Positions 3,196 to 18,268 of a stretch of DNA of 64,000 bases are shown in pieces. Where the stretch lies: the IMG/VR virus record IMGVR_UViG_3300044633_000899, positions 186,001 through 250,000 of that record; one strand, given 5' to 3'. Positions within the stretch are counted from its first letter, which is position 1; every line of letters begins with the position of its first letter. Below the pieces are notes generated by a model, which saw only the letters and a list, made by a program, of their open reading frames with translations, was not told the DNA's origin and did no database searches. The position numbers and the translations under genes are program-made.

Positions 3196-3945
3196 TTATT
3201 TATATATTTCGTTAATTATTTTTGTATATATTTTTTTGTATTTTTTAATTGAAACTCTAATTTCTTTTGTTGAAAGATTCGTCATCTCACGTAATTCAAA
3301 TAATATAATGTTTTTATTAAATTTATTATTGTTTGTCGTTTCTTGGAATATACTTGTGTAATTTGAGAATATATCATACAACGCAGCACCTAGTTTTCTT
3401 TCTTCCTCAATCATTGATTCGTCATCTAAAATAGTTTTAAGTTCGTCCAAAAATTTAACGATAACTTGTTCTGTCGTTACATCGTCATTGTCAATGTAAT
3501 AAACCATACTTGGTAACCCATCTAAATCACTAGAAATATCTTCATACGAAATTTTCCTATTTATTTCTTTTTGATCCTTTTGTATTTGACCCATTAAATA
3601 GTTCTTACAAATAGTTCCAAAATATGAATATGCTTTTTTTTCTTTTGACGGTTTGAATTTATCAATTTTAGTCATCAAAAACGAATGAGTATCCATATGG
3701 ACTTCATTGAAGTCCATATCTTTTCTATATAATTTATATCGTCTGATTATTGACGAAATCATTTTATCTAAAGGTTCTTTTAAAAACTCATTGTAAATTT
3801 TATTTTTCTCTTCAATTGAATCTGTTATTAGAAATTCTCTAACAGCGTTTTCTTCTGGTTCGTCAAAATAATTTTTTTGAGTTGGTTTACGACCTTTCTT
3901 TTTCTTTTCAGTTCCTTGTTCTAGTGATTCTTCATTTTCTGACAT
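3196..3945 (-). CDS. Late-transcription sigma factor, T4 gp55-like
   Basis: KFKPSKEKKAYSYFGTICKNYLMGQIQK resembles the gp55/sigma region 2 motif. The likely start MSENEE at 3945 overlaps the upstream stop (TAATG), rather than the track start at 3996. Confidence 0.65.
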   Translation of the reverse strand: MSENEESLEQGTEKKKKGRKPTQKNYFDEPEENAVREFLITDSIEEKNKIYNEFLKEPLDKMISSIIRRYKLYRKDMDFNEVHMDTHSFLMTKIDKFKPSKEKKAYSYFGTICKNYLMGQIQKDQKEINRKISYEDISSDLDGLPSMVYYIDNDDVTTEQVIVKFLDELKTILDDESMIEEERKLGAALYDIFSNYTSIFQETTNNNKFNKNIILFELREMTNLSTKEIRVSIKKYKKIYTKIINEIYK

Positions 3946-4754
3946 TAAACTTCTTGGGGATCGTAATTTATCTCTCGTTGAGTAATAAATAAACATTCCT
4001 TTCTAGCAGAGTCAATCCAAAATTTAACCTCATCCTCAATCAATCTATCTTCACTATACTTATAATTCCAAAATATGGATCCTTCACGCATATTCATATG
4101 TTTATAACCAATTTTTGGTATTGTCATAAAGTTAACAGATGAATTTGTCATTCGTAAAAAGAACTCATAACCAAATGTTAATTTTATATTTGATTTAAAA
4201 CCACCATACTCTAAAAATTTGTCTTTATTGATAACAAGTCCTGATATTTGGAAATTTTGATACGTTTGTAACGTTTCGTTTGTTAAAACACCCATCTCTG
4301 TTGTAAAATTTGCTGCAAATGTTGCTTCGTTTGTAAACCCAGCGAAAACACCTTTTTCATCAACATCAACAACTATAGGTAAAAACGCATCAACAGATTT
4401 ATAAATACCCATATAATTTGTGACATGTTTGAACCAAATATTTGAGTATTCATCGTCAAACTCTAATAACGATACCCAGTTACTTGTTGCTTGTCTTACA
4501 CCTTCATTAACTTGTTCGGCAAAATTAGGACTTTCTGTCCATAAAACACGATTAACCGTTAAACCACTAAAATCAAATTTATCTAAAAAATTAACTAATA
4601 AATCTTCATCTGTGTGAACAATTACTAATTCATTAACATATGATTCTTGATTTTTAACTGACATCACACTTTTTGTAAAGTATTCATCAAATTGTCCTAA
4701 CTTACCACTTTTAATTGGTAGTACTACTGATATTTTATTTTCCATATTATTCAA
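3945..4754 (-). CDS. Glycosyltransferase family 2 (GT-A)
   Basis: N-terminal ISVVLPI strand, LLEFDDEY DxD-like motif, NFAEQVNEGV segment. Confidence 0.8.
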   Translation of the reverse strand: MNNMENKISVVLPIKSGKLGQFDEYFTKSVMSVKNQESYVNELVIVHTDEDLLVNFLDKFDFSGLTVNRVLWTESPNFAEQVNEGVRQATSNWVSLLEFDDEYSNIWFKHVTNYMGIYKSVDAFLPIVVDVDEKGVFAGFTNEATFAANFTTEMGVLTNETLQTYQNFQISGLVINKDKFLEYGGFKSNIKLTFGYEFFLRMTNSSVNFMTIPKIGYKHMNMREGSIFWNYKYSEDRLIEDEVKFWIDSARKECLFITQREINYDPQEV

Positions 4755-5808
4755 TTGTTTCTAATTTATTTAATTGTTCTTCAAAACTACTTAATCTTGT
4801 TGTAATCATTTTATCAAATGTTGATACAACATTTTCTGTGAATGTTTCATTAGTAATTAATGATTCTGTTGTTTTATCCATCTCAGTATGTAATTCAGGA
4901 CTAATATTATCTTCCAACCAATTCTGAATATAATCCGCGATAACGTCAACTAAAATGTTTTTATTATTAATCCAAATACCGTTATTTTCATTCATCCATT
5001 CTGGAATCATATTCGGAACTACACCAATTACTGGAATACCCATTTTAATTGATTCTAAAGGAAATGTACCGTATGCTGAATTATCGTCAACCCAAACAGA
5101 TACAAAACTTTCAGACATTCTTTGTGCAAATTCTTCCTCAGACAACCCTCTTAAATCTCTAAACGTAAACCATCTGTATTGTGGAAATCTAGAATAAAAC
5201 GCTTTGATTGTGTTTGTCGTATCTCTATGATCTCTTGTATGAATATTAATAATTGTTTTAGGTGGTAATTCTTGTTTTACAAAGTTATCAGAAATCATCG
5301 GTTCAACAACGTCAACAGAAACGTTTCTCATTGTTTTTTCTACCCATTCTTTCTGTCTTTCTGATGTTGTGATACATTTTAAAAACCCAAAATTTGACCA
5401 GTTTTCACCTGGTTGTAACGCATCAAAAATATAGTCATATGATTGACAAAGAACAATTTTACCACAAGGTGCATTTTTAATTTGTTCCATAACAAAACCA
5501 TAAATTTCAGGTATTACCAATAGATCTTCTGGTGATATCTCAAGACTAGAACCGTCAATTGGTTTATGTGGTAGTTCAGTCATATATTTTTCACCTAACC
5601 ACTCAGAAACACCTTGGTAGTCTGGTTTTTCGTGTAAAATAATTGAGTTATACCCGGATTCTTTTAAAGACATTGCCATTTGGTAAATGTATCTAACGGA
5701 CGCTTTCGCGTTTCCTTTAGTTTCTTGTACCAAAAAATAAATCCGATTTTGTTTGTTTCGCATGTTCTCAATAGAACGTTCTAATTTTGAAATTTGTTCT
5801 TGATTCAT
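4747..5808 (-). CDS. GT-B fold glycosyltransferase-like protein (GT4-like)
   Basis: C-terminal FGTFPLES-type motif (SAYGTFPLESIKMGIPVIG) typical of GT4. Confidence 0.7.
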   Translation of the reverse strand: MNQEQISKLERSIENMRNKQNRIYFLVQETKGNAKASVRYIYQMAMSLKESGYNSIILHEKPDYQGVSEWLGEKYMTELPHKPIDGSSLEISPEDLLVIPEIYGFVMEQIKNAPCGKIVLCQSYDYIFDALQPGENWSNFGFLKCITTSERQKEWVEKTMRNVSVDVVEPMISDNFVKQELPPKTIINIHTRDHRDTTNTIKAFYSRFPQYRWFTFRDLRGLSEEEFAQRMSESFVSVWVDDNSAYGTFPLESIKMGIPVIGVVPNMIPEWMNENNGIWINNKNILVDVIADYIQNWLEDNISPELHTEMDKTTESLITNETFTENVVSTFDKMITTRLSSFEEQLNKLETIE

Positions 5809-5815: not shown

Positions 5816-6070
5816 TTATAGTTTATTTATTATACCCTTCATTAATAGGGTGTTGAATGCTAATTTAAATGGTATTGGTACGTTTGTAGACTTAAACCCT
5901 ACTTGTTCATCAATCTCTTCGGGTTCACTAAGGATAATCTCCAACATTAACTTTATTGTTTCATATTTCACAAAATGAACTTGTGTTTCACCCGAAACAG
6001 ATTTTAAACTAGTATAATCTTCAATCTTGTCTAGATCAACGTAGTAATTTTCATTAATAACTTTAAACAT
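5816..6070 (-). CDS. Hypothetical protein
   Basis: Co-oriented ORF overlapping the upstream stop. Confidence 0.6.
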   Translation of the reverse strand: MFKVINENYYVDLDKIEDYTSLKSVSGETQVHFVKYETIKLMLEIILSEPEEIDEQVGFKSTNVPIPFKLAFNTLLMKGIINKL

Positions 6071-6722
6071 ATTGTGTTATTTTTTTAAGTACTCCTTTAA
6101 ACTCAGATAATGAATTTATTTCATATTCTGAATTTATGTGTTTATTATATTTAGTATTAAACTTAATTAAAACTTTATCTACTGGTTTATTTAATAATAG
6201 GTTAGGATTAGCAGTAAGTAAAATGTCAATTTCATCCCAAATGATATTTTTTGTTGATTCACTATAAAAAACTATTTTTTCTAATAAACAACCAAATTTT
6301 GACAAGAAAAATAATGTCGCTGGTTTTGATTTACCAATTTCATCAGATAGTATTGTCAAGTCATAATCGTTTCTTAAATCATAATAAATTTCATTTAATA
6401 AATTAAAAGTACTAAGTTCTGTTGATGGTGCATGACCAAATATCTCCATCGTATAGTCTTCAAAAAGAAAAGAATATAGTTCATCTTGATTCTGAAATGA
6501 AAAGTGTGATTTTAAATCTAATGACGTAACATCACTTAATATTTCATATTTAAAATGTTCTGGTTGTACAATTTCTTCAGTGTTACCAGACATATCAACT
6601 TTAAATGTTTGACCAATAAAATCGTTCTGATTATTATCAATCAAATATTTTTGATAAAGTTGCGTAAATTTTTCAATTGTGTCACGTAAAACACCATTAA
6701 CCTCAATCCCTATTTTCTTCAT
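6063..6722 (-). CDS. HAD-superfamily 5'(3')-nucleotidase-like protein with a degenerate motif I
   Basis: Starts KKIGIEVNGVLRD, at the position of the NT5C-like IGIDxDGVL motif. Confidence 0.55.
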   Translation of the reverse strand: MKKIGIEVNGVLRDTIEKFTQLYQKYLIDNNQNDFIGQTFKVDMSGNTEEIVQPEHFKYEILSDVTSLDLKSHFSFQNQDELYSFLFEDYTMEIFGHAPSTELSTFNLLNEIYYDLRNDYDLTILSDEIGKSKPATLFFLSKFGCLLEKIVFYSESTKNIIWDEIDILLTANPNLLLNKPVDKVLIKFNTKYNKHINSEYEINSLSEFKGVLKKITQYV

Positions 6723-7440
6723 ATTCTTCTAACATTTTACTAATTAATGGATTACGTACATTTTTAGCACCCCTAAAATCATAAATCCCAATGTCATTAA
6801 TATTTTTAAATCTTTGTAATGCGTCGTACAAACCTGATTGTTTTTTATCTTTATATCTATCTGTTTGTTCCAAATCTCCAGATATAAAAAATTTACTATT
6901 AAAACCAATTCTTGTCAATAGTAATTTCATTTGATTTGGTGTTGAGTTTTGTGCTTCTTCAAAAATAAGTATTGAATTATCGATGTTCATACCTCGCATG
7001 TATGCTAATGCAAAAACCTCAATAACCTCAGCGTCCTTTAGTTTTTCCCTCACGTCTTTACCAATAATTTTATTTAAAAGATAATAAGAGGGGAAAATGT
7101 AAGGATCTAATTTTTCTTCAAGATTTCCAGGAAGTGAACCAAGTTTCTCCTCGGCTTCTACCGCGGGTCTTACAATTATTATTTTTTCATAAGAATTATC
7201 CGGATCCAATAGTAAATCAACCGCAGCTTTCATTGCAATATATGATTTACCAACACCGGCTGGTCCTGACGCAATTGTAATTTGATTTGATTTTAATATA
7301 TTATAATAATCTTCTTGATGTTCAGATAAGAATTTATTTCTTTGTCGTTTTTTTATAACCGAATTAATAAACTCTTTTTTTGAGAATGGCTTAGATTCTT
7401 GTTCTTCATTTGTTATTGGTGTTTTTCTTTTACTTGTCAT
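6703..7440 (-). CDS. phoH: PhoH-family ATPase
   Basis: GPAGVGKS Walker A, RPAVEAEEKLGSLPG, AYMRG, EEAQN, LTRIG and GDLEQTD motifs. Confidence 0.95.
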   Translation of the reverse strand: MTSKRKTPITNEEQESKPFSKKEFINSVIKKRQRNKFLSEHQEDYYNILKSNQITIASGPAGVGKSYIAMKAAVDLLLDPDNSYEKIIIVRPAVEAEEKLGSLPGNLEEKLDPYIFPSYYLLNKIIGKDVREKLKDAEVIEVFALAYMRGMNIDNSILIFEEAQNSTPNQMKLLLTRIGFNSKFFISGDLEQTDRYKDKKQSGLYDALQRFKNINDIGIYDFRGAKNVRNPLISKMLEEYEENRD

Positions 7441-7457: not shown

Positions 7458-7826
7458 TTAAATATAAAACCATCTTATAAATAATAAACACCCGAATAAC
7501 CAAATTATTGGGAATGTCCTATTTTTCCCAATAGTCTTAAATGTCTTTAAACAATTTTCAATAACATCTGTTTTATTAAACATTATGTCATCATCTAATG
7601 TAAAAATAAAACCTTCATCAACCATTGACCCAACTAACCATCTTGGCCAACATTTAAAATTATTTGACGAATTAATTTGAACATCTACATCATAAGATGT
7701 CTTATCCTCAATATTATTATTCCATAACCATATATCAACATCAATTGATTGATCCCGTATGGATTGAATTACTTTAACAATGTTTTCTTGTCGTTTCCAA
7801 TTTAATAATAGTGCAGTTACTTTCAT
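7458..7826 (-). pseudogene. Truncated GT-A glycosyltransferase-like ORF
   Basis: GT-like N-terminus (LLLNWKR...FTLDDDI) but only 122 aa, with an aberrant hydrophobic tail. A one-base shift gives IIGYSGVYYL followed by a stop. Confidence 0.4.
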
Positions 7827-7828
7827 TA

Positions 7829-8590
7829 TTAAAATAATTTACTATCTGTAATATATTCAGGTAATTTAGTTAAGGAGTTTCTCCAGTCATTTAAAATATC
7901 GTTTATTTTTTTTTCGTCTGTCATTGAATACCTGTCTGTTGATTTAGAATATAAATTATTACTAATAATATTATTATTCACCATAATCATAGGACAACAT
8001 TTACCAATATCAATTAAAAAAATATTATCTGAAATTTTATTACCATTTTTATTATGTCTTCCTCCATCCCACGTATAATAACTTTTTAGTACGGTTACTT
8101 TTGAATGGTGTTCATCATCAAAAACACAAAAAGACCTTTGGTTTAAAATTTTATCGTCTTTATTAATAATGTTCTCGGTTATGTCGGGTATTATGACCAC
8201 ACCTTTAGGTGTTATAAAATCCGAATCATTATTAATAATGTAATTACGTAAATCTGTGTGATATAAAATCTCATCAATATCAACATATATTGTAATAAAT
8301 CCTTTTGATATGTAGTGATCAACAAATGAGTTTTGTTTACCTAATAAAATTGGAACACCTATGTGTGAGTTCTTAACCATTTCAAAAGAGTCTTCAGAAA
8401 ACCCTTTAGTTTTTAAATAATCTGAAACCACATCAAAATTTTTATCTAAAATTAAAAAATGAAACTCACTGTAATTAAAAAATTTTAAGTAGTAGTCAAT
8501 AAAAATATCGGAAATAATATTAGATCTATCTATGTAAGTTCCAATTTTTAATTTAACATTATCAATGTGTTTTTTCATAACCCTCTTCAA
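7829..8590 (-). CDS. GT2-like glycosyltransferase
   Basis: YVDIDEILY DxDE motif and WDGGRH. Confidence 0.6.
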   Translation of the reverse strand: MKRVMKKHIDNVKLKIGTYIDRSNIISDIFIDYYLKFFNYSEFHFLILDKNFDVVSDYLKTKGFSEDSFEMVKNSHIGVPILLGKQNSFVDHYISKGFITIYVDIDEILYHTDLRNYIINNDSDFITPKGVVIIPDITENIINKDDKILNQRSFCVFDDEHHSKVTVLKSYYTWDGGRHNKNGNKISDNIFLIDIGKCCPMIMVNNNIISNNLYSKSTDRYSMTDEKKINDILNDWRNSLTKLPEYITDSKLF

Positions 8591-9272
8591 TATGTTTACA
8601 CGTAACTTTATTAACTAAAACACCCTTCAAATTATTATTATTAAAATATTCTCTTATCCTATACCATAAATCGGCATCACCAGGTAATCCTGAAAATCCT
8701 GTTTCTTCAAAGACATTTCTATGTCTAAGTGGTATTTTTTTAAAATTTATACAAGTTGATGAATGTATTAAACCTTCAGGTGTTGGATTAAATTCTACTA
8801 ACTCCAAATCACTATTTATCATTGGATATTCCATAAAATGTTTGTATTCTGATTTAGTACATAACCATAATGAATTTGTTTTTATTATGGCATCGTTTAA
8901 TGATGAAAGATGATTTGGGTACCACTCATCATCATGATCTAAATGGCAAACATATTCATAACCATCTGATATTGATTTATTAATACCATAATTATTTGCA
9001 AAACACCCACCATATTTCCATATTAATGTTTTGTCAGTATATTTATCTCTTTCATGTGCAATAGGTAGATTCTCAAAATATATTTTATCTTTTGGGAATT
9101 CATTAAAAATAGATTCAAACTCTTCATTATTTTCATATTTATCTCCAATAACATAAATTTTAAATAGATGATAATCTTGATCAAATATGCTCTGTAATGC
9201 TCTTTTTAAATATTTTGGGGTGTTACCATCTTTTCTTTGGTAAGTTGTTATAACTATACTAAAATCAATCAT
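8562..9272 (-). CDS. Glycosyltransferase family 2
   Basis: FSIVITTY, YVIGD, NYGIN and HLDHDDEW motifs. Confidence 0.85.
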   Translation of the reverse strand: MIDFSIVITTYQRKDGNTPKYLKRALQSIFDQDYHLFKIYVIGDKYENNEEFESIFNEFPKDKIYFENLPIAHERDKYTDKTLIWKYGGCFANNYGINKSISDGYEYVCHLDHDDEWYPNHLSSLNDAIIKTNSLWLCTKSEYKHFMEYPMINSDLELVEFNPTPEGLIHSSTCINFKKIPLRHRNVFEETGFSGLPGDADLWYRIREYFNNNNLKGVLVNKVTCKHIEEGYEKTH

Positions 9273-10883: not shown

Positions 10884-10889
10884 ATTATT

Positions 10890-11597: not shown

Positions 11598-12168
11598 TTC
11601 TTATAACGAAATTCTTAGATAAATTATTTTTAAGAAATAAACCAATCTCATCCATTGATACATGAAATAAATCATCTCTTTCCCAGTCAACTAATTTTGA
11701 CATCACATTAAAGGCTATCCCTTTGTTTGTTTTTAACCAAAGAGTTTTTAGAGTATTTGACATAAAATCAAACATTTCTTCATAACTTAAATCTCTTTTT
11801 TCAGTAAAAGTACCATTACAAACAATATAATCAAAATTAGGTATTTCATCGTTAATATTAATATCCTTTAAAAAGAAATTAACTTCAGGGTATTTTTTTA
11901 TACAATGGTCATAAAATTTTTCATTTATATCTAAACCACTATAAACGATTTCGTTTTCTTTTTTTTCGTTTAAAATAAATTTATAAAGATGACCTAAACC
12001 ACACCCAAAATCAAGTAATGATGATTTATTGTTTTCATTTATTAGATCTAACATAACTTTATATCTTGTTAATGTATCTTCATATTTTGGCCAATCAACC
12101 CCCAAGTGATTATCCCCATGATCCTCAAAACACTTTTTATAATGTTCGGCAATTTTTAAATAGTTCAT
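11554..12168 (-). CDS. Class I SAM-dependent methyltransferase
   Basis: LLDFGCGLG motif I, YSGLDIN and FDYIVCNG. Confidence 0.9.
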   Translation of the reverse strand: MNYLKIAEHYKKCFEDHGDNHLGVDWPKYEDTLTRYKVMLDLINENNKSSLLDFGCGLGHLYKFILNEKKENEIVYSGLDINEKFYDHCIKKYPEVNFFLKDININDEIPNFDYIVCNGTFTEKRDLSYEEMFDFMSNTLKTLWLKTNKGIAFNVMSKLVDWERDDLFHVSMDEIGLFLKNNLSKNFVIRNDYKLYEYTIYVYK

Positions 12169-12860
12169 ATTAAAGTGTAATTGTTTAATTCTTTTATTAT
12201 TGTGTTTTTTGGGTATCTAAATAAAATATCTAATATTGAATTGTATGGATTGTCAAAATTAACGTCTCCCATTTTTATAAAATTAAGTTCAATATCGTTT
12301 AAATTAAAATCTTCTTTATTGTAAAGTTTTTGACCCCCGATTGCATTTACGTACTTGTTACCATTAAAATGTTTAACAATATCTTGTAACCCTTCATTTT
12401 TTTTTCTATCTGTGATTCCACAACTAGTTGATATTAAATTACATTTTATGTTCAGATAATTACAAACATATTTAATTGATGTAAAATTAAAATTTGAAAT
12501 ACTGACATTATCACCTATAGATAAAATTTCATTCTTCCATGGATGTATTATGTTATCAATTACATCATTGTAATACTCGTCTTTTTTATAAAGTTGAGAA
12601 AGTTTTTGTTCAAATTTATTAAACCAATCTTCATTTAATAAAACGTTAACTTCTGTACATTTTTTATTTTGACTGCCGTTTATAACAGGAATGTTTATTT
12701 GAGTGTCACTTTTTATTTTATTTCTTACCATATAACTTCTTTTCATAAAACTAACGTGATCTAAATTAACATATAAATTAACCGCATTAATTAATTGAAA
12801 ATACCCAATATAAGGGAAAAAGTAGGGTTGCATTATCCCAATCGTAATGTTATTGTCCAT
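12165..12860 (-). CDS. wbqC: WbqC-family protein
   Basis: IMQPYFFPYIGYFQLI N-terminus, YVNAIGGQKLY and SILDILF. Confidence 0.9.
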   Translation of the reverse strand: MDNNITIGIMQPYFFPYIGYFQLINAVNLYVNLDHVSFMKRSYMVRNKIKSDTQINIPVINGSQNKKCTEVNVLLNEDWFNKFEQKLSQLYKKDEYYNDVIDNIIHPWKNEILSIGDNVSISNFNFTSIKYVCNYLNIKCNLISTSCGITDRKKNEGLQDIVKHFNGNKYVNAIGGQKLYNKEDFNLNDIELNFIKMGDVNFDNPYNSILDILFRYPKNTIIKELNNYTLI

Positions 12861-13491
12861 ACACTTTAAATTTTGAAAGATCGGGATAAGATAATTCTAA
12901 ATCATCATTTTCTTTAGGTTTACCTGTTTTTGTTTCGTAAAATTGAGTTATCAATAGCAGCCCTCTTGCGGATATCTCCGGCATCATATAAAAGTTCCAC
13001 CCAACAACTGGGTTGTTGTCAAAATCATCATCGTGATAACTACATTCGTCTCTACCACTAAACCTTGCTTTTTTGAACCATTTATATGCTTGTTCATCGT
13101 CAGTTAGAATTGCACCTCCCTTACCTAATTTTAAGTGTTTATAAGGACCGGTAAAGGACAAACACATATGTGTATTAGGGACATACATATTAGATGTAAA
13201 TCTTAAAGCACTATCCCATACTTTTGTTGGGTATAATTGATAAGCACCTTTTATTGTGTCACCCTCAACAGGTGTAAATTTAACTTTACCACCCGCATGA
13301 ATAATCTCACAAGGTACCGAAGGGTATGTTCTTGACGGAATCTCAATGGTCATTCCTTTTATTTTTTCATAAGTTAATGCCAAGAATAACGCATTACTTT
13401 GGTTGTCAACGGTAACAACATACTTTGCTCCCGTATAGTGAGATAATTTCTTTTCAAAATCTTCTGTTATTTTATAAACACCATTAGCCAT
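12850..13491 (-). CDS. Short DegT/DnrJ/EryC1/StrS-type PLP sugar aminotransferase
   Basis: FEKKLSHYTGAKYVV, SNALFLAL, WDSA, SFTGPYKHLKLGKGGAI (PLP lysine) and GWNFYM. Confidence 0.8.
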   Translation of the reverse strand: MANGVYKITEDFEKKLSHYTGAKYVVTVDNQSNALFLALTYEKIKGMTIEIPSRTYPSVPCEIIHAGGKVKFTPVEGDTIKGAYQLYPTKVWDSALRFTSNMYVPNTHMCLSFTGPYKHLKLGKGGAILTDDEQAYKWFKKARFSGRDECSYHDDDFDNNPVVGWNFYMMPEISARGLLLITQFYETKTGKPKENDDLELSYPDLSKFKVYGQ

Positions 13492-13493
13492 AA

Positions 13494-15005
13494 TTATTTT
13501 ATTAAAACTTTATTTTTTATTTGTTCCCATTTTTGACTAATAATAGGAAACAAATAATTTTTGTAATCATTATTTAATTTTATCATATCTTCAGAATCTT
13601 CTTTTCTTGTTTGTGATTCATAATGATATGCAACACAATCACCACATACATAATTCGTAAAACCATTAGATTTAATAATTACATTTAACTCAACATCTTC
13701 AAAACAAGTTGTGTAGTTTTCGTTAAACATATTGGACTTAATAAATAAATTTTTACGAACCATCATTAAACCACCAGTATTCCCAATAACATCTTTTAAT
13801 TGATTATAATAGTTGTAGTAGTTTTTTAAATTTAAGTGTCCAACGTGTATTCTGTTGTGTTGTTTTTCTAGTAGTATTAACATACCGTCGTGTTGGATTG
13901 TATTATCGTCAAAATGTAACCTTGCGCCAACAGTACCCGTTTTTTTATCTTTTTCAAAAACACCTAACATCCCACTAATAATATCATTTAATAATTTAAT
14001 GTCATTATTACAAAATAATAAAAACTCATATTCATCAGTTATATGATTTTTAATAACATCATTATTTATCTTGGCAAAATTATAGTAATCATACTCAATT
14101 AATTTTATATTATCATATTTTGATGTGTTATCACGAATTTCTTTTTTTTCATCTTCTGATGAACCTGTGTCGGCAATAAATAAATTAAAAACATTAGTAT
14201 CACAATGATCATAAAATGAATTAACACAATCTAATAACATATCAACCTTACCTTTTGTTGGTATAATAACCGCAACTTTACCAAATTTTTTAAAAGTTTT
14301 TCTTTTTATTTCTGGAACATATGGTTCAGTTGGTTTTAAATCCAAAGGTAGGTGTTGTTTCCATTTTTCCAAGAATTTTTCTTTTGATTCGTAGAACTCC
14401 TCATTCGGTCTTCCAACAGATTCGTGTGTTATTTCAAACGAAGATGTTACACCAATTTTAACACCATCAACGTAATTTGGAATACAAAATCCGTGATCAT
14501 AAAAATGAAATTTACCGTATGATTCATCAAAGGTGTGTTTAACTTTTGTCTTATTAAAAGAAATGAATAATCCATCAATTGTAACGACTGGGACAATAAA
14601 TGGTAATTTTGGCGAAAAACGACTTAAAAACTTTTTCTCACCTGGGGGATGGTGATAAACTTGACCAACCATTGTTTGTGTTAATTTTTCCCAATAAACA
14701 CCTGACTCTGGAAAATAACAGGATCCTGCTTTACCAATAATACCAAACTCTGGGTTGTTGTTAAAATCTTCAAGTAATTTAACACCCCACCCTTTCTCAA
14801 GTTTTATATCATTATGACAACACACTATGATGTCATATTTAGCATTACCAATACCTTTATTGTAAAGTTCTGATAATGAATATTGATTATGGTTTTCGTA
14901 AGGTATTACTTGTACGTGTTGAAGTCCTGATGTTAATACAAGATGATCGTTAAATTTATCGTTGTATTCTTTATCTCTATGTGTTGAGTAAATTATTGTT
15001 ATCAT
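13494..15005 (-). CDS. Two-domain GT-A glycosyltransferase
   Basis: Domain 1: VCCHNDI, FHFYD. Domain 2: VAVIIPTK, FCNNDI, FEDVE, YHYESQTR. Confidence 0.85.
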   Translation of the reverse strand: MITIIYSTHRDKEYNDKFNDHLVLTSGLQHVQVIPYENHNQYSLSELYNKGIGNAKYDIIVCCHNDIKLEKGWGVKLLEDFNNNPEFGIIGKAGSCYFPESGVYWEKLTQTMVGQVYHHPPGEKKFLSRFSPKLPFIVPVVTIDGLFISFNKTKVKHTFDESYGKFHFYDHGFCIPNYVDGVKIGVTSSFEITHESVGRPNEEFYESKEKFLEKWKQHLPLDLKPTEPYVPEIKRKTFKKFGKVAVIIPTKGKVDMLLDCVNSFYDHCDTNVFNLFIADTGSSEDEKKEIRDNTSKYDNIKLIEYDYYNFAKINNDVIKNHITDEYEFLLFCNNDIKLLNDIISGMLGVFEKDKKTGTVGARLHFDDNTIQHDGMLILLEKQHNRIHVGHLNLKNYYNYYNQLKDVIGNTGGLMMVRKNLFIKSNMFNENYTTCFEDVELNVIIKSNGFTNYVCGDCVAYHYESQTRKEDSEDMIKLNNDYKNYLFPIISQKWEQIKNKVLIK

Positions 15006-15751
15006 AAAAAAGAATTAAAAATTTGGTTGTAATGTGTGTACGCATTTTTATTTCGCATATGTAAATTTCTTAAAACCCCAACACTATTTATGTCGTTTTC
15101 GCACGTAATCTCATAGGGTTTTGGTCCGTGAAAATGTATGATATTAACATCATCGTTAATACCCCAATATGGTTTCCAATTAAAAATTATTGGTAATTTA
15201 GTTAAATCTTTAATAAATAAATTATTATACATACTTTGATCCCAAATATCTAAATTCTCAAAATTTTCAGTTATATAATTTAGTATAAATTCATCATTTT
15301 GATTAAAATAATTAAAATTACCGACCATAACACCAGCATTTACGTATGACCAATCGTTAATGTTAGACTCTGGTGATGCTGCAAAAATTTTTGGTTTTAG
15401 TGTTTCTATTTGAGAATAATCCCCACTCTGGAAAACAACGTCATAATCGGTATATAAAAAATAATCATCAATAATATTATTTTTTTTCATTAAAAATGGG
15501 ATTTCAGTTCTTAAAAACGTACCTGAAGAGGTTGTTAAATCCCTATTAGAATTTTTAAATGTTTCATAACATCTGTGTCTATGTTCAATTATTGTAACTT
15601 CTTTTGGTAAATTTAAAACGTTTTTATTACCATCAAAAATAACATAAACATCAAAATTCGTATTTTTAAGTGCTGATTTTACCGCAACCTCTAACATTTT
15701 TATTTTATTGGTGTTTGCGGTGTTTTCATTTGTTGATAAAAAAAGTTTCAT
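15002..15751 (-). CDS. Glycosyltransferase family 8-like
   Basis: LYTDYDVVF, VNAGVM, DQSMYN, FNWKPYWG and IIHFHGPKP motifs. Probable start MKLFL at 15751, just after the dut stop. Confidence 0.8.
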   Translation of the reverse strand: MKLFLSTNENTANTNKIKMLEVAVKSALKNTNFDVYVIFDGNKNVLNLPKEVTIIEHRHRCYETFKNSNRDLTTSSGTFLRTEIPFLMKKNNIIDDYFLYTDYDVVFQSGDYSQIETLKPKIFAASPESNINDWSYVNAGVMVGNFNYFNQNDEFILNYITENFENLDIWDQSMYNNLFIKDLTKLPIIFNWKPYWGINDDVNIIHFHGPKPYEITCENDINSVGVLRNLHMRNKNAYTHYNQIFNSFL

Positions 15752-15755
15752 ATTA

Positions 15756-16331
15756 CTAAAATCCTGTTGAGCCGAAACCATTATTATTACGATCTTTATC
15801 GTCAATCTTATCTGTTTTAACTAAGTTAACCCATTTACCACACACAACTGGACAAAGTACCGCTTGTGCGATTTTTTGACCAAGATTAATTACAACATCT
15901 TCTTTACTAGTATTAAAAATAATAACTTTAACTTCTGAATTATAACCAAAATCTACAGTTCCGGGAGAATTTAACACCATTAAACCTTGTTTTAATGCCA
16001 ACCCACTTTTACTTCTAACTTGGATTTCATATCCGTCTGGAATATCAAAACTTAATCCAGTCCCAATTAGAACTCGTTCACCGGCTTTAATTATCAGTTC
16101 TTCTGTTGACCTCAAATCAAATCCTGAATCCGTAATGTACGCGTATTCTGGTTGGGGTAGTGTTTCATTAGTGTTAGTGTAATATAACCCAATCTTTGGT
16201 TGATACTCATCTAAAGTTTTTTCTAATTCATTAAAATCAATCCCTAGTTCTCCAACAATACTGTTAATATCAATATCATCAAAATCTGTATTCAAAACGT
16301 TTTTTAACTCGTCAAATTTATTATCATTCAT
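15756..16331 (-). CDS. dut: Trimeric dUTPase with an acidic N-terminal extension
   Basis: SGFDL, QVRSKSGLA, GTVDFGY, IAQAV and RNNNGFGSTG motifs. Confidence 0.95.
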   Translation of the reverse strand: MNDNKFDELKNVLNTDFDDIDINSIVGELGIDFNELEKTLDEYQPKIGLYYTNTNETLPQPEYAYITDSGFDLRSTEELIIKAGERVLIGTGLSFDIPDGYEIQVRSKSGLALKQGLMVLNSPGTVDFGYNSEVKVIIFNTSKEDVVINLGQKIAQAVLCPVVCGKWVNLVKTDKIDDKDRNNNGFGSTGF

Positions 16332-17050
16332 TATTCTAAACTTTTTAATTTCATTATTGCCTCAACTAATACGTCAACATCTCTTTCACAATATTCACCA
16401 ATCTCTTTTAATTTTTGATCTTCCCAATATGCTTTATGAACAGTTGCACCGGTAACCTCACCACCTTTTGGTGTTGGTATGTCTAAACAAGAACATAATA
16501 AATCTAAAGATCCGATTGAGGTGTATGCACCATATTGCCAAATTTCTTTTGTGTCAATCGCTTTAATTTCCCAAGGTTTGGTATCGTATGATGGTAAGAT
16601 TTTTGATGGTCTAATACCGTTAATAATCATTCTTTTTGCCATCATCGGTATGTCAAAGTTTTTTAAATTGTGACCACATAAAAAGAATCCAAGTTTTTCA
16701 CATCTATCTAATAGTGATCTAACATCTTTTAACAAAACTTTCTCATCGTCACCAACAAAAGATTGTTTTTTTGTTTCACCATTCTCAAGAACAAACGCAA
16801 CAGAAACACACACAATTTTGGCAAACTCTGGAACTAACGCAGTTCTTGTTGAGAATATAATGTTTTTTGTTTCGTTTTCATTAGATCCTTTTGTCGCGTC
16901 TTCAGGAAAACGTTTTAAGAACCAGTCATAATATTTATCAAACTGTTCAGCAATGATAGGACTAAATTTTTGACACGCATCATAGTTAGGGTAACCACCA
17001 ACTGTTTCAATATCTAAAAATAAAATTTTTGTTATAGGTATATTTATCAT
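16331..17050 (-). CDS. Stand-alone DEDD 3'-5' exonuclease (PolB-exo-like)
   Basis: FLDIET (ExoI), GHNLKNFDIP (ExoII) and YCERDV (ExoIII). Confidence 0.85.
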   Translation of the reverse strand: MINIPITKILFLDIETVGGYPNYDACQKFSPIIAEQFDKYYDWFLKRFPEDATKGSNENETKNIIFSTRTALVPEFAKIVCVSVAFVLENGETKKQSFVGDDEKVLLKDVRSLLDRCEKLGFFLCGHNLKNFDIPMMAKRMIINGIRPSKILPSYDTKPWEIKAIDTKEIWQYGAYTSIGSLDLLCSCLDIPTPKGGEVTGATVHKAYWEDQKLKEIGEYCERDVDVLVEAIMKLKSLE

Positions 17051-17053
17051 AAA

Positions 17054-18268
17054 TTATTTAATTAAGGATTTGTAAAATGAATATCTATTTGATGTTACAA
17101 CGTTTAAATTGTATGTATCTTTAACGGTTTCGTATAACCTCTCACCAATATCGGTAATAAAGTTTGGATTGTCAACTAATTTTTTAACGTATTTAGCCCA
17201 GTCACTATGATTGTTGTTTTCATTTACAAGTAATGCGTTTCCATCTGTAAATTGACCTTTATCTAATGCGTGTTTTAAATCAATCGTATATGGACCAACA
17301 TTTGATGCAATTAATGCTTTTTTATAAAAACCGGCTTCAATAACCTTTAATTGAGATTTCATTCTGTTAAAAATGTGGTTTTGAATTGGTGCTAAAGATA
17401 TGTCAAACTTTGAGTAATTTTTGGCGTAACTATTTACGGGTCTTGTCCAAACTCTAACATAATTTTCTTTATCAACATTAGGGTAATAACCCTCAACAAA
17501 TGTGTCCAAATATTCTTTATAGTTTGGTGTTATAATTTTATATTTGTTTGTGAAAATTTCTTCATACTTAACCCACACTGTTTCACTAGGGGTAATCGGT
17601 CGTTGTGTTTTTTGACCCGTTTGTTGGTTGATTTCCGTAACAGAACCACGAGTATCAAAACCACAAACATAATATTGTAATTTATCTTGTATAGGTGATA
17701 ACTTTGATACCATACCATCTAATAATTTTAAATCGTGTAAATGTGATGATCCACCCAACCAACCAACACGAATTTTTTCTGACGGTAATGTTGGTTCATT
17801 AAACTGACCTTCATTCGGATCAATAGCGTTTGGTAATACAATAACGTTTTTATTGTATTTTCTAATCTCGTTTGCAAAAATCTCAGTTGTTGTTGTTATA
17901 TAATCTGAAACTTTTATGTTTGCTATAATTTTTTCGTGAATTTTGTTTTGTAATATAATTTGTTGTATTGGATGTTCTTTTGTTGGTAACCAATAGTCAT
18001 CAATATCCATAATAACAACAATACCGATTGATTGTAAATATTTTATAAATTCTGGACAACTTTCATAATCGTTCCCAATATTACGATGAAAGTGTATGAT
18101 TTGATATTTTTTCCAAAAATTTATATTAGTTGTATCAACACTATACTCAATATCCACATGGAATTCATTTGGATACATATTTTGTAGTTTAACGTGTGGA
18201 TCAACTGTACGAAATTTTGATACCCCCGAGGTATCTGATGCGATTGCTAAGACATTAATTTTTTCCAT
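17054..18268 (-). CDS. GT-B glycosyltransferase (GT4-like)
   Basis: DIDDYW, VLPNAID, GWLGGSSH, DISLAP, KSQLKVIEAG and IASNVGPY motifs. Confidence 0.85.
   Translation of the reverse strand: MEKINVLAIASDTSGVSKFRTVDPHVKLQNMYPNEFHVDIEYSVDTTNINFWKKYQIIHFHRNIGNDYESCPEFIKYLQSIGIVVIMDIDDYWLPTKEHPIQQIILQNKIHEKIIANIKVSDYITTTTEIFANEIRKYNKNVIVLPNAIDPNEGQFNEPTLPSEKIRVGWLGGSSHLHDLKLLDGMVSKLSPIQDKLQYYVCGFDTRGSVTEINQQTGQKTQRPITPSETVWVKYEEIFTNKYKIITPNYKEYLDTFVEGYYPNVDKENYVRVWTRPVNSYAKNYSKFDISLAPIQNHIFNRMKSQLKVIEAGFYKKALIASNVGPYTIDLKHALDKGQFTDGNALLVNENNNHSDWAKYVKKLVDNPNFITDIGERLYETVKDTYNLNVVTSNRYSFYKSLIK

What the first reader, a model, noticed from the sequence alone, without database searches (positions are those of the whole stretch)
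3945..18268. 14-kb phage glycan-biosynthesis island
Seen: about eight GT-like ORFs (GT2, GT4, GT8) and sugar-tailoring enzymes interleaved with core phage genes (phoH, dut, exonuclease). Further GT-like genes lie at 32185, 41242, 42483 and 60657, giving about 12 in 64 kb. Inference: the phage builds a complex glycan on the virion, its DNA or the host surface, which is far beyond the 1-3 GTs of typical phages.
Basis: partly seen in the sequence, partly recalled or inferred. Interest (0 to 1): 0.6.

Follow-up and report, generated by a model that had tools for sequence, protein, structure and literature searches.

The report
Jumbo-phage glycan locus with swappable cassette
A 296-kb lake-water jumbo phage carries about a dozen sugar-transferase genes: a conserved set plus a 6-kb sugar-modifying cassette that differs from phage to phage and was recently swapped between distant relatives, so these phages appear to vary a glycan the way bacteria vary their O-antigens.

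Summary
In window 3945-18268, on the minus strand, there are 5 well-supported glycosyltransferase (GT) genes carrying 6 GT domains, 2-3 weaker GT leads and 6 sugar-tailoring genes. They are interleaved with PhoH, dUTPase and a PolB-type exonuclease. Three more GT genes are well supported at 32185, 41242 and 42483. The gene at 60657 is a lead only. The GT8 label was not confirmed.

The window belongs to a complete 296,330-bp tailed phage from lake water. It fits the recently described "moraphages", whose predicted hosts are Bacteroidota.

New here: the island has two tiers. A GT backbone is conserved in 80 or more related viral contigs. It brackets two hypervariable slots holding 176 protein clusters, mostly nucleotide-sugar tailoring enzymes. 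The window's slot-1 cassette (about 7563-13462) is 99.3% identical in DNA to a relative whose flanks are only about 72-74% identical. That indicates recent lateral exchange.

Homologous gene modules sit in Bacteroidota polysaccharide loci beside ABC-2 transporter and polysaccharide-export genes. The phage has no initiating transferase and no export genes.

The acceptor is unproven. I favour threonine/proline-rich, mucin-like phage proteins encoded beside the GT genes. Host-surface remodelling and DNA glycosylation remain rivals.

Phages rich in GT genes are already known, so this is a new variant of a known kind.

The parts
3196..3945 (-). Conserved backbone gene of unknown function. The true start is Met18 of the listed 3196-3996 ORF.
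   Evidence: Homologues in 37 of 80 loci at about 68% identity. Stops in the relatives lie only upstream of M18. The sigma-70 lead is weak, E=0.0011, and a PDB profile search did not support it.
3945..4754 (-). Backbone GT2-family (GT-A) glycosyltransferase.
   Evidence: PF00535 at 25.3 bits against a cut-off of 23.3. Conserved in 46-49 of 80 loci at about 64% identity.
4747..5808 (-). Backbone GT-B glycosyltransferase related to the Agt/AmGGT retaining glucosyltransferases (GT4).
   Evidence: Profile A2 hits PDB 8xsg at E=1.5e-13. Family function is taken from PMC12159676. Conserved in 51-57 of 80 loci.
5816..6722 (-). Two conserved backbone genes of unknown function (5816-6070 and 6063-6722).
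   Evidence: Found in 58-64 of 80 loci. No Pfam, NCBIfam or PDB match.
6703..7440 (-). PhoH-like ATPase, the conserved left flank of variable slot 1.
   Evidence: PF02562 at 210 bits. Found in 66-69 of 80 loci at 74% identity.
7563..13462 (.). Slot-1 cassette, recently exchanged between diverged phages.
   Evidence: 41 mismatches in 5.9 kb (99.3% identity) to L051, L053 and L114, whose flanks are about 72-74% identical. The edges are sharp.
7458..7826 (-). Truncated remnant of a GT-A-like gene at the cassette edge.
   Evidence: Weak GT64 hit. The homologue L114:17179-17844 is 221 aa, and there is a 330-bp indel at about 7488.
7829..8590 (-). Cassette gene, GT-A-like (lead only).
   Evidence: No Pfam or PDB hit. 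Atlas feature hits at 0.97 to viral 'GT2-like'/GT92 clusters.
8562..9272 (-). Cassette GT2 glycosyltransferase.
   Evidence: PF00535 at 39.7 bits. Weak PglI/WcaA-type hits.
9269..10036 (-). Cassette 2OG-Fe(II) oxygenase (PhyH type).
   Evidence: PF05721 at 56 bits. Syntenic with WbqC in bacterial loci.
9987..10883 (-). Cassette GH130-like / beta-mannoside-phosphorylase-like protein.
   Evidence: NF052550 at 35.8 bits and PF04041 at 19 bits, both weak. Syntenic in bacteria at 43-54% identity.
10890..11597 (-). Cassette sugar N-acetyltransferase of the NeuD/PglB/VioB type.
   Evidence: Hexapep at 54 bits. TIGR03570 at 146 bits, just under its cut-off of 160.8.
11554..12168 (-). Cassette SAM-dependent methyltransferase.
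   Evidence: Several class-I methyltransferase Pfam families.
12165..12860 (-). Cassette WbqC-family protein. The family is associated with O-antigen clusters; its chemistry is unknown.
   Evidence: PF08889 at 152.6 bits.
12850..13491 (-). Short (213 aa) DegT-like protein. Its conserved 5' end is the right-hand recombination junction.
   Evidence: PF01041 at 58.6 bits in two stretches. The lysine of the SF..K motif is retained, but about 150 aa are missing compared with solved DegT enzymes. Found in 19 of 80 loci, with a paralogue at contig 83087-83734.
13494..15005 (-). Backbone two-domain GT-A glycosyltransferase, the anchor between the two variable slots.
   Evidence: PF13712 at 80.5 bits plus PF00535 at 49 bits. 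204 viral-contig relatives were found; the 80 kept are 61-76% identical.
15002..15805 (-). Occupant of variable slot 2, function unknown.
   Evidence: Found in only 5 of 80 loci at about 37% identity. No family or PDB hit.
15756..17050 (-). Backbone dUTPase (15756-16331) and PolB-exo2-like 3'-5' exonuclease (16331-17050).
   Evidence: PF00692 at 82 bits and PF10108 at 45 bits. Conserved in 71-75 of 80 loci.
17054..18268 (-). Backbone GT-B (GT4-like) glycosyltransferase.
   Evidence: AF2 model with pLDDT 83. Foldseek hits to MshA, GlgM, PglA and BshA at E 5.6e-12 to 1e-9. Conserved in 70 of 80 loci at 70% identity.
32185..33369 (-). DUF2827 protein with a GT-B fold, core to the lineage.
   Evidence: PF10933 at 340 bits. 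Found in 34 loci at 54-98% identity. Model pLDDT 69.7, with all top Foldseek hits GT-B transferases at E about 1e-7 to 1e-6.
41242..44141 (+). GT60-type GlcNAc transferase (41242-42486) and an HtrL/YibB-family protein (42483-44141).
   Evidence: PF11397 at 230 bits and PF09612 at 74 bits. The two travel together and lie next to DUF2827 in L002 and L022. GT60 homologues at 43-48% identity occur in cultured jumbo phages XacN1, Xoo-sp13, CM1 and RAS14.
60657..61586 (-). Possible GT (lead only).
   Evidence: No Pfam, NCBIfam or PDB hit. Atlas hits at 0.95-0.96 to clusters with Glyco_trans_1_2, GT90 or RXYLT1_C.
21347..24379 (+). 1010-aa protein with three Thr/Pro-rich mucin-like linkers, a candidate glycan acceptor.
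   Evidence: Linker scan; shuffled proteins gave none. Weak PHROG virion-protein hits, possibly caused by the low-complexity linkers.
34584..35372 (+). 262-aa protein made largely of Thr/Pro repeats with no signal peptide, a candidate acceptor.
   Evidence: The homologue in L002 is 578 aa with ten repeat blocks.
40689..41198 (+). 169-aa protein with a Thr/Pro linker, directly upstream of the GT60 gene; a candidate acceptor.
   Evidence: It is co-inherited with GT60 and HtrL in L002.
61987..63999 (+). Start of a 1107-aa protein with a Thr-run/Thr-Pro linker, next to the 60657 GT lead.

Best explanation
SHOWN. The island is a two-tier glycan-biosynthesis locus of a complete freshwater jumbo phage.
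- A set of soluble glycosyltransferases is conserved across the lineage: GT2 at 3945, Agt-like GT-B at 4747, the two-domain GT-A at 13494 and the GT4-like gene at 17054. Elsewhere in the window are DUF2827 (GT-B fold) and GT60/HtrL.
- This backbone brackets two slots that hold different sugar-tailoring genes in different phages.
- The window's 5.9-kb slot-1 cassette contains a short DegT-like gene, WbqC, a methyltransferase, a PglD/VioB-type N-acetyltransferase, a GH130-like gene, a 2OG oxygenase and GT-A genes.
- It is related to modules found in polysaccharide loci, mostly of Bacteroidota.
- It was exchanged recently by recombination with a phage that is about 72-74% identical in the flanks.

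INFERRED.
- The conserved GTs build a common core oligosaccharide in the infected cell's cytoplasm from host nucleotide-sugars.
- The cassette enzymes add strain-specific amino, acetyl or methyl sugars. Relatives would therefore make different 'glycotypes'.
- The phage has no lipid-carrier initiating enzyme, no flippase or polymerase and no ABC exporter. It does carry a GT60-family gene (a protein Thr/Hyp GlcNAc-transferase family) and an Agt-like GT next to Thr/Pro-rich mucin-like proteins that lack signal peptides.
- The most likely acceptors are therefore the phage's own exposed proteins (fibres or decorations), glycosylated before assembly.
For: Gene identities.

The element is a phage and is complete:
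- Portal and major head protein genes.
- 175-bp direct terminal repeat.
- CheckV completeness 100%.

Backbone versus slots:
- Backbone genes occur in 46-80 of 80 loci; cassette genes in only 3-19.
- Slot lengths run from 15 bp to 9.5 kb and from 0 to 3.9 kb.
- The slots hold 176 protein clusters, with 35 gene orders in 55 loci for slot 1 and 25 in 46 loci for slot 2.
- Pfam tally of slot genes: methyltransferases, GDP-mannose dehydratase, epimerases, DegT, hexapeptide and GNAT acetyltransferases, GT2, GT11, WbqC.

Recent exchange: 99.3% identity inside the cassette against about 72-74% outside, with sharp edges.

Bacterial source:
- The WbqC / acetyltransferase / GH130-like / PhyH order is syntenic in bacterial contigs: three Bacteroidota genomes or MAGs (Arcicella, Emticicia, Cytophagaceae) and a contig binned as Roseiflexaceae; Winogradskyella keeps part of the order.
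- The Bacteroidota loci scanned also carry full-length DegT, ABC-2 transporter and Poly_export genes.

No initiation or export genes in the phage.

Protein-acceptor lead:
- GT60 family match at 230 bits.
- The closest solved relative of the 4747 gene belongs to a family that elongates glucose on cytoplasmically glycosylated adhesins.
- Six proteins carry Thr/Pro linkers, four of them in this window and beside GT genes; shuffled proteins gave none.

The cassette is present in at least 13 lake or freshwater studies beyond the two possible source samples, and as short contigs in two freshwater RNA libraries.
Against: - No glycan, glycoprotein or acceptor has been observed. Every link to a target is circumstantial.
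- Thr/Pro linkers are common spacers and need not be glycosylated.
- O-antigen GTs are often soluble. Missing export genes are therefore equally compatible with hijacking the host's lipid carrier and exporter.
- AmGGT itself uses free oligosaccharides, not glycopeptides.
- The transmembrane scan was a crude hydropathy scan.
- The genome has no 4,6-dehydratase or SDR epimerase, and its DegT-like protein is truncated. The amino-sugar branch may depend on host enzymes or do something else.
- The RNA-library contigs may be DNA carry-over.
- Interleaving with dUTPase, an exonuclease and PhoH could instead hint at a DNA-related role.
Confidence: 0.45

Rival explanations
1. Host-surface remodelling. 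The phage GTs and tailoring enzymes act on the host's undecaprenyl-linked O-antigen or capsule intermediates. They use the host's initiating transferase and ABC or Wza export machinery. The infected cell's surface glycan changes, which could give superinfection exclusion, stop progeny re-adsorbing to infected cells or debris, or affect grazers.
For: - The cassette genes are homologous and syntenic with modules in bacterial, mostly Bacteroidota, ABC-transporter-type polysaccharide loci.
- The hypervariability mirrors O-antigen loci.
- This role has been proposed for the large 'cell wall/LPS' gene sets of cyanomyoviruses (PMC12801897).
- The lack of phage export genes is expected if host machinery is used.
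Against: - A multi-GT backbone conserved across phages whose hosts presumably differ in O-antigen is hard to fit to host-specific lipid-linked acceptors.
- GT60 and Agt-type families are known from cytoplasmic protein or oligosaccharide glycosylation.
- No GtrA/B/C-like or other membrane-embedded modifying enzyme was seen.
- Thr/Pro-linker proteins lie beside the GT genes.
Confidence: 0.27
2. DNA hypermodification. The GTs attach mono- or oligosaccharides to modified bases of the phage DNA to block restriction, and cassette variation diversifies the DNA glycan.
For: - The GT genes are interleaved with nucleotide-metabolism genes: dUTPase, an exonuclease and PhoH.
- DNA glycans made by several phage GTs are documented (Pyle et al. 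2024, as cited in PMC12619734).
- T4 alpha-glucosyltransferase appears among the GT-B fold hits, at low rank.
- An arms race with restriction systems could also drive hypervariability.
Against: - The only thymidylate-synthase-family gene scores as a canonical ThyA equivalog, 269 bits against a cut-off of 108. No hydroxymethylase-type enzyme was identified.
- Aminotransferase-like genes, N-acetyltransferases, O-methyltransferases, GDP-mannose dehydratases and GT11 fucosyltransferase-family genes are typical of surface glycans. From my own knowledge, they are not typical of the known DNA glycans.
- The T4 alpha-GT similarity is only the generic GT-B fold.
Confidence: 0.13
3. A loose collection of auxiliary metabolic genes. 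The GTs and sugar enzymes are independently acquired and act on assorted small molecules or host pathways, with no single glycan product.
For: - Several ORFs are only leads or unknowns.
- One cassette GT is truncated.
- The DegT-like protein is shortened.
- No dehydratase is present to feed an amino-sugar pathway.
Against: - The backbone order is strictly conserved in 80 or more contigs.
- The cassette moved as one 5.9-kb unit.
- The same four-gene order is kept in bacterial polysaccharide loci.
- Slot contents are overwhelmingly nucleotide-sugar enzymes.
All four points argue for one co-selected pathway.
Confidence: 0.1

Closest known systems
Moraphages (Perez-Hernandez et al. 2025, Arch Virol, PMC12619734)
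   Same: - Aquatic, mostly freshwater, jumbo phages of 200-307 kb.
- PolB-type replication.
- An H1/Hc1-like histone gene.
- Predicted Bacteroidota hosts.
- Four core orthogroups annotated as glycosyltransferases.
The window genome is 296 kb, comes from lake water, has PF07432 and has several lineage-conserved GTs.
   Different: In the sections I read, the paper only lists the GT orthogroups and cites general roles. It does not describe a backbone-and-slot architecture, cassette diversity, cassette exchange, a bacterial source or candidate acceptors. Membership could not be tested by phylogeny because its genomes are not in my collections.
'Cell wall/LPS' gene clusters of large cyanomyoviruses (P-SSM2, S-SCSM1, S-SCSM2R; PMC12801897)
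   Same: Lytic phages over 200 kb with 13 GTs and about 22 sugar genes, including epimerases and a GH130 mannoside phosphorylase. The target is unknown, and host-surface or DNA roles have been proposed.
   Different: The phage lineage and host phylum differ. Here there are no epimerase or Kds-type genes in the genome. Here there is a demonstrated hypervariable slot and a 99.3% identical cassette shared between diverged genomes.
Bacterial O-antigen / capsule loci (ABC-transporter-dependent type) of Bacteroidota
   Same: - The WbqC / acetyltransferase / GH130-like / PhyH module is homologous and syntenic, alongside GT2 and methyltransferase genes.
- Gene content is hypervariable between conserved flanks.
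   Different: The phage copy lacks the initiating transferase, the ABC-2 transporter, Wza-type export and a full-length DegT. It is embedded among phage replication and structural genes.
Virion glycosylation in mycobacteriophages (Freeman et al. 2023, as cited in PMC12619734) and the clade-specific fibril glycosylation clusters of giant viruses (from my own knowledge)
   Same: Virus-encoded GTs, and in giant viruses amino-sugar tailoring enzymes such as aminotransferases and N-acetyltransferases, glycosylate the virus's own surface proteins in the cytoplasm. Gene sets differ between clades.
   Different: Mycobacteriophages use 1-4 GTs and no tailoring cassette. Giant viruses infect eukaryotes. 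Here nothing shows that the virion is glycosylated.
Cytoplasmic protein glycosylation systems: GT60 (Skp1 hydroxyproline and mucin-type Thr GlcNAc transferases; my own knowledge of the family) and NGT/Agt of Actinobacillus (PMC12159676)
   Same: 41242-42486 matches PF11397 at 230 bits. 4747-5808 is homologous to AmGGT/Agt at E=1.5e-13. Both families work in the cytoplasm on soluble acceptors.
   Different: No NGT/HMW1C homologue or prolyl hydroxylase was identified. The acceptor specificity of the phage enzymes is unknown, and AmGGT does not accept glycopeptides.

Membership tests
Moraphage lineage (PMC12619734) | Aquatic jumbo genome of 200-307 kb | tested here: met
   296,330 bp with a 175-bp terminal repeat. 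The cassette occurs in lake and freshwater metagenomes.
Moraphage lineage (PMC12619734) | Histone H1/Hc1-like protein (PF07432), reported in all four complete genomes | tested here: met
   PF07432 at 72.7 bits at contig 33778-33945.
Moraphage lineage (PMC12619734) | Several core glycosyltransferase orthogroups | tested here: met
   GT genes at 3945, 4747, 13494 and 17054 are conserved in 46-80 of 80 related loci. The DUF2827 GT-B gene occurs in 34 loci.
Moraphage lineage (PMC12619734) | Clusters with moraphages in MCP, TerL and PolB trees | not testable with these tools
   The moraphage sequences are not in the collections I could search. PolB has only 23-31% matches to cultured phages.
Moraphage lineage (PMC12619734) | Bacteroidota host signal | tested here: inconclusive
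   Hc1 matched only Bacteroides among the 14 control genomes. Bacterial relatives of the cassette are mostly Bacteroidota. No CRISPR-spacer or tRNA evidence was sought.
Self-sufficient bacterial O-antigen/CPS locus | GTs plus nucleotide-sugar tailoring enzymes | tested here: met
Self-sufficient bacterial O-antigen/CPS locus | Initiating phosphoglycosyl transferase (WecA/MraY type or WbaP type) | tested here: not met
   No PF00953 or PF02397 match in the whole genome at E<=0.1. The control genomes gave matches.
Self-sufficient bacterial O-antigen/CPS locus | Export and polymerisation machinery (Wzx/Wzy or ABC-2 transporter, Wza) | tested here: not met
   The hydropathy scan found no protein with the 10-12 membrane spans expected of Wzx or Wzy; at most 4-5 spans were seen, and only in small proteins or the 1812-aa ORF. 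The bacterial homologous loci do carry ABC-2 and Poly_export genes. This was a crude test; no Pfam scan for Wzx/Wzy was run.
Phage DNA glycosylation system (T4-type and relatives) | Enzyme making a hydroxymethyl-pyrimidine (a divergent thymidylate-synthase homologue) | tested here: inconclusive
   There is one PF00303 gene, and it scores as a canonical thymidylate synthase (TIGR03284, 269 bits against 108). Substrate-specificity residues were not examined.
Phage DNA glycosylation system (T4-type and relatives) | Specific homology to DNA alpha/beta-glucosyltransferases | tested here: not met
   T4 alpha-GT appears only at rank 32-47 among generic GT-B fold hits. There is no sequence-level hit.
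Virion protein glycosylation (mycobacteriophage type) | Glycans attached to capsid or tail proteins | not testable with these tools
   This needs purified virions and mass spectrometry.
Virion protein glycosylation (mycobacteriophage type) | GT genes adjacent to virion-protein genes | tested here: inconclusive
   The island lies between the portal/MCP module and large Thr/Pro-linker, LRR, BspA-like and tail-spike-like proteins. Most of those neighbours are not proven virion proteins.
CAZy GT60 / Pfam PF11397 GlcNAc transferases | Match to the family profile above its gathering score | tested here: met
   230.4 bits against a cut-off of 21, in two stretches. Catalytic residues were not checked.
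GT4-type GT-B transferases (gene 17054-18268) | Two-Rossmann-domain GT-B fold matching solved GT4 enzymes | tested here: met
   pLDDT 83. Foldseek probability 1.00 and TM 0.54-0.64 to MshA, GlgM, PglA and BshA. The Pfam sequence hit is below its cut-off.
Seroconverting Gtr-type phage modules | GtrA flippase, GtrB and a polytopic GtrC | tested here: inconclusive
   The crude hydropathy scan showed no such set of membrane proteins in or near the island. No Gtr family profile was searched, so the Gtr genes were not looked for directly. No integrase was looked for.

The most novel reading that the evidence does not exclude
These freshwater jumbo phages may run a phage-owned 'serotype' system. A conserved GT core, plus cassettes captured from host polysaccharide loci and traded among phages by recombination, would decorate mucin-like Thr/Pro-repeat proteins on the virion with strain-specific glycans. 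These virion glycotypes would be under the kind of diversifying selection known for bacterial O-antigens. One possible driver is that glycan-foraging Bacteroidota hosts bind, or fail to bind, the virion through its sugars.
Probability: 0.3. Interest if true: 0.75.

Novelty: new variant of a known kind. Interest (0 to 1): 0.55.

Why it matters
Phage genomes rich in GT genes have been reported, but nobody knows what the glycans are for.

This lineage offers a natural experiment. The same backbone carries at least 35 different slot-1 gene sets. At least one cassette moved recently between phages that otherwise differ by about a quarter of their DNA letters. That pattern implies strong, changing selection on the exact sugar structure. 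It also shows that phages shuffle polysaccharide genes among themselves as well as taking them from hosts.

The analysis yields concrete, cheap tests:
- GT60 together with the neighbouring Thr/Pro-linker proteins.
- Cultured jumbo phages XacN1, Xoo-sp13, CM1 and RAS14, which carry the GT60 homologue.

If virion glycotypes are confirmed, that would change how host range, grazing, particle stickiness and antibody or lectin recognition of environmental phages are thought about.

Tried and rejected
- Near-identity DNA search of the island against 50,697 phage records: no match. There is no cultured close relative. PolB reaches only 23-31% identity to Salinibacter and Nostoc phages.
- PDB profile searches found nothing usable for 17054-18268, 6063-6722, DUF2827 and 3196-3945. 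The same held for single sequences 7829-8590, 60657-61586 and 15002-15805. Two of these were then resolved by fold prediction.
- Sigma-factor idea for 3196-3945: a single weak NCBIfam hit, not supported by the PDB profile search. It remains only a lead.
- Suspected stop-codon recoding, because homologues of 3196-3996 showed in-frame stops: rejected. All the stops lie upstream of the true start, Met18, and are a mix of TAA, TAG and TGA. No alternative genetic code was used anywhere.
- A conserved junction motif or promoter-like element at the slot edges: none. New genes begin 1-20 nt after the two-domain GT stop codon. The right-hand junction lies within the conserved first 40 nt or so of the DegT-like gene.
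- A search for other pairs of loci sharing a cassette across diverged backbones found only the window together with L051, L053 and L114.
- PHROG scans of the large neighbours on the minus strand and of the first five large genes of the genome gave nothing.
- Not used: the two large protein searches (search for homologous proteins, the search of protein representatives), because the family scans and loci sufficed; and complex prediction, because no binding claim is made.
- Read laying was given exactly 6,000 letters.

Full report
**1. What the window is**

The 64-kb window is bases 186,001-250,000 of a 296,330-bp IMG/VR virus record that CheckV rates 100% complete. The first 175 bases recur at the very end, so the genome has a direct terminal repeat and is complete. 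G+C is about 30% throughout, including the island.

It is a tailed phage. A portal gene (with an HNH-endonuclease-like insertion) and a major head protein gene lie at contig 162.9-172.3 kb, just upstream of the window. The window itself holds a family-B DNA polymerase, a helicase and a tail-spike-like virion protein. No tRNA gene lies in the window.

There is no close cultured relative:
- Megablast of the island against 50,697 phage records finds nothing.
- PolB is only 23-31% identical to Salinibacter and Nostoc phage polymerases.
- The best PhoH match is a 735-kb uncultured phage, at 43.5%.

**2. Checking the observation**

All genes of 3945-18268 lie on the minus strand and mostly abut or overlap. 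Pfam, NCBIfam, PDB-profile and fold evidence are listed gene by gene in the parts table.

- Five genes with six GT domains are well supported: 3945, 4747, 8562, 13494 (two domains) and 17054.
- Two are leads: 7829 from Atlas features, and 7458, a truncated remnant.
- One slot gene, 15002, is unannotated.
- Six tailoring genes are present: a 2OG oxygenase, a GH130-like protein, a PglD/VioB-type N-acetyltransferase, a SAM methyltransferase, WbqC and a short DegT-like protein.

Outside the island:
- 32185 is DUF2827 at 340 bits. Its AF2 model (pLDDT 69.7) matches only GT-B transferases.
- 41242 is a strong PF11397 (GT60-type) match, and 42483 belongs to the HtrL/YibB family.
- 60657 has only an Atlas lead.
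- No GT8 was found.

Elsewhere in the genome there are at least two more GT2 genes, at contig 134.0-136.9 kb. There is also a second small tailoring cluster at contig 81.7-83.7 kb, containing a paralogue of the short DegT-like gene.

**3. A large family of relatives, and a two-tier architecture**

The two-domain GT (13494-15005) has 204 relatives in IMG/VR contigs. The 80 kept are 61-76% identical, and the longest of those contigs are 270-322 kb. DUF2827 occurs in 34 further loci.

I ran tblastn of every window ORF against the 80 loci.

- Conserved backbone: 2815-7440 (including the GT2, the Agt-like GT-B and PhoH), 13494-15005, and 15756-21277 (dUTPase, exonuclease, GT4-like gene and five further genes of unknown function). 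These are present in most loci that reach that far.
- Variable genes: those of 7458-13491 occur in only 3-19 loci, and 15002-15805 in 5.

The distance between the two-domain GT and PhoH ranges from 15 bp to 9.5 kb. The distance between dUTPase and the two-domain GT ranges from 0 to 3.9 kb.

ORFs in these two slots fall into 176 clusters at 50% identity or more, and 81 of them are seen in a single locus. There are 35 different gene orders among 55 loci for slot 1 and 25 among 46 for slot 2.

A Pfam scan of 150 cluster representatives shows what fills the slots:
- Methyltransf_24 (13 members) and FkbM (11)
- GT2 (10)
- GDP-mannose 4,6-dehydratase and SDR epimerases (9 each)
- RmlD-like (6)
- Hexapeptide acyltransferases (5)
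- DegT (4) and TylF (4)
- WbqC, GT11, GNAT and CmcI (3 each)
- C-methyltransferases (2)

This is the gene repertoire of an O-antigen-type hypervariable locus, held between conserved phage genes.

**4. Recent exchange of the window's cassette**

Three near-identical contigs (L051, L053, L114) carry the window's nine cassette genes at 95-100% amino-acid identity. Their flanking backbone genes are only 53-81% identical.

A base-level alignment shows 41 mismatches in 5.9 kb (99.3% identity) from about 7563 to 13462. Identity falls within one 100-bp bin to 63-82% on the right and about 71-78% on the left. The two-domain GT is 74.4% identical in DNA between the same contigs.

- The right junction falls in the first 40 nt or so of the DegT-like gene. 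Many cassettes share that 5' end.
- The left junction coincides with a 330-bp indel that truncates a GT-A-like gene in the window.
- No dedicated junction motif was found.

The simplest reading is homologous recombination during co-infection, which moved a whole cassette between phages that have otherwise diverged by about a quarter of their nucleotides.

The cassette DNA is found at 0.8 k-mer share or more in 13 further lake or freshwater metagenome studies, released between 2017 and 2024. Short 150-590-nt contigs at 95-100% identity occur in two freshwater metatranscriptome libraries. The RNA result is compatible with expression but does not prove it, because RNA libraries can carry DNA.

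**5. Where the cassette genes come from**

Those kept are 32-51% identical and mostly from Bacteroidota, with some Clostridia and others. Bacteroidota genera include Dyadobacter, Emticicia, Arcicella, Flectobacillus, Winogradskyella, Flavobacterium and Chryseobacterium.

In several of these loci the order WbqC, hexapeptide acetyltransferase, GH130-like, PhyH oxygenase matches the phage order, at 38-73% identity. Some also have the methyltransferase.

The gene just upstream of WbqC in three of the bacterial loci is about 356-361 aa; the one scanned individually (L130) is a full-length DegT. The neighbourhoods hold ABC-2 transporter pairs, Poly_export/SLBB (Wza-type) proteins and GT2, GT1 and WbsX transferases. 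The phage cassette is therefore the cytoplasmic part of a module found in bacterial surface-polysaccharide loci, without the membrane and export part.

**6. What the phage lacks**

Whole-genome searches found:
- No WecA/MraY-type or WbaP-type initiating transferase.
- No SDR epimerase or dehydratase (phmmer with the relatives' enzymes also found none).
- By a crude hydropathy scan, no protein with the 10-12 membrane spans expected of a flippase, polymerase or ligase.
- No membrane helix in any island GT.

The only thymidylate-synthase-family gene scores as a canonical ThyA equivalog. Nothing therefore points to hydroxymethyl-pyrimidine synthesis, the usual prerequisite for DNA glycosylation.

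The DegT-like protein is 213 aa where solved enzymes are 370-400 aa. It keeps the lysine of the SF..K motif but lacks about 40 aa of the large domain and most of the C-terminal domain. It is nevertheless conserved in 19 loci and duplicated in this genome.

**7. Candidate acceptors**

Two of the GT families are known from cytoplasmic glycosylation of soluble acceptors.
- PF11397/GT60: Skp1 hydroxyproline and mucin-type threonine GlcNAc transferases. This rests on my own knowledge of the family; Pfam's own name for it is 'Glycosyltransferase (GlcNAc)'.
- The Agt/AmGGT family: these enzymes extend glucose on cytoplasmically N-glucosylated adhesins or on free oligosaccharides (PMC12159676).

A scan for Thr/Ser/Pro-rich linkers finds six proteins in the genome and none in shuffled controls. 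Four are in this window, each near a GT gene:
- 21347-24379: three linkers; the first gene after the island block.
- 34584-35372: about 80 residues of TP repeats. Its homologue in L002 is 578 aa with ten repeat blocks.
- 40689-41198: immediately upstream of GT60, and inherited together with GT60 and HtrL in L002.
- 61987 onward: next to the 60657 GT lead.

(Supporting calls: 18, 106-108.)

The two small proteins have no signal peptide. In the relatives L002 and L022, DUF2827, GT60 and HtrL sit side by side, and DUF2827 is duplicated in L022.

This is circumstantial evidence, because such linkers are also plain spacers. It does give a specific, testable acceptor hypothesis.

**8. Comparison with what is known**

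The genome fits the 'moraphages' described in November 2025. These are freshwater jumbo phages up to 307 kb, with PolB, an H1/Hc1-like histone, predicted Bacteroidota hosts and four core GT orthogroups. The window genome matches on size, habitat, the PF07432 gene and conserved GTs. Tree-based membership could not be tested.

Large cyanomyoviruses carry comparable numbers: 13 GTs and 22 sugar genes in S-SCSM2R, which its authors call possibly the highest count in a marine phage. GT richness as such is therefore not new.

In the papers I searched and read I did not find any of the following:
- a conserved backbone with hypervariable slots;
- the breadth of cassette diversity;
- a near-identical cassette shared by diverged phages;
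- a source in bacterial ABC-type polysaccharide loci;
- the association with mucin-like linker proteins.

(Searches.)

My search was limited to open-access text, so a prior description elsewhere cannot be excluded.

**9. Verdict**

The architecture and the exchange are shown directly by sequence, and I hold them at about 0.85 confidence. The bacterial origin is well supported.

The acceptor is inferred. My odds are:
- virion or phage proteins, about 0.45
- host surface glycan, about 0.27
- DNA, about 0.13
- no single product, about 0.1

Novelty: a new variant of a known kind. Interest: 0.55.

No step needed to be referred.

Noticed in passing
window 52754-56671, and contig-wide (for example C1:30782, 49859, 77055, 78974, 116808, 166712, 283644): A ~149-aa protein family is present in 14 copies across the genome. 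Six lie in tandem here at 61-77% identity, plus one more divergent copy. Some copies are fused into larger proteins of 365 and 507 aa. Function is unknown. It may relate to the multi-copy homing-endonuclease or antitoxin modules reported for moraphages.
   Followed up: partly
window 12850-13491, and contig C1:83087-83734: A 'mini' DegT-like protein of 213 aa. It keeps the PLP-lysine motif but lacks about 150 residues of the normal fold. It is conserved in 19 related loci and duplicated in this genome, so it could be a minimal aminotransferase or a repurposed domain.
   Followed up: partly
contig C1:162873-165968 (L043:2873-5968) and C1:172474-176465: The portal gene carries an HNH-endonuclease-like insertion at residues ~229-412. 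Two large homing-endonuclease genes (574 and 538 aa, phrog_3339) sit directly after the major head protein gene.
   Followed up: no
window 28075-32107: An 899-aa leucine-rich-repeat protein and a 432-aa DUF285 (BspA-like) repeat protein lie side by side. This region and 38189-41198 (pectate-lyase-like proteins) vary among relatives, so they are probable host-recognition modules.
   Followed up: partly
window 3196-3945: A very highly conserved backbone protein, with long invariant stretches, has a weak sigma-70/ECF-type hit (E=0.0011). It could be a phage transcription factor for this gene block. A PDB profile search did not support this.
   Followed up: partly
contig C1:33778-33945: A histone H1/Hc1-like gene (PF07432, 72.7 bits). 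Among the 14 control genomes, only Bacteroides has this family.
   Followed up: partly
window 33972-34549: Two small membrane proteins (65 aa with 2 predicted helices, 127 aa with 3) lie between a weak DnaJ-like gene (33366-33992) and the Thr/Pro-repeat protein. They may be holin-like.
   Followed up: no
L022:1413-3808: In one relative the DUF2827 GT-B gene is tandemly duplicated, and the copies are about 60% identical to the window's. The duplicates are directly followed by the GT60 and HtrL-like genes.
   Followed up: no
L128 (JBMTAN010000037.1, a 32-kb contig binned as a Roseiflexaceae MAG): This contig carries the closest non-viral copies of four cassette genes, at 51-73% identity and in the same order. 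It may be a mis-binned phage or a recent transfer.
   Followed up: no
window 25423-27975: An 850-aa ORF lies in a locally G+C-richer stretch (0.38 against about 0.30) and has a 430-aa antisense ORF. This suggests biased or repetitive composition. It is conserved in 24 of the 34 DUF2827 loci, and no family hit was found.
   Followed up: no
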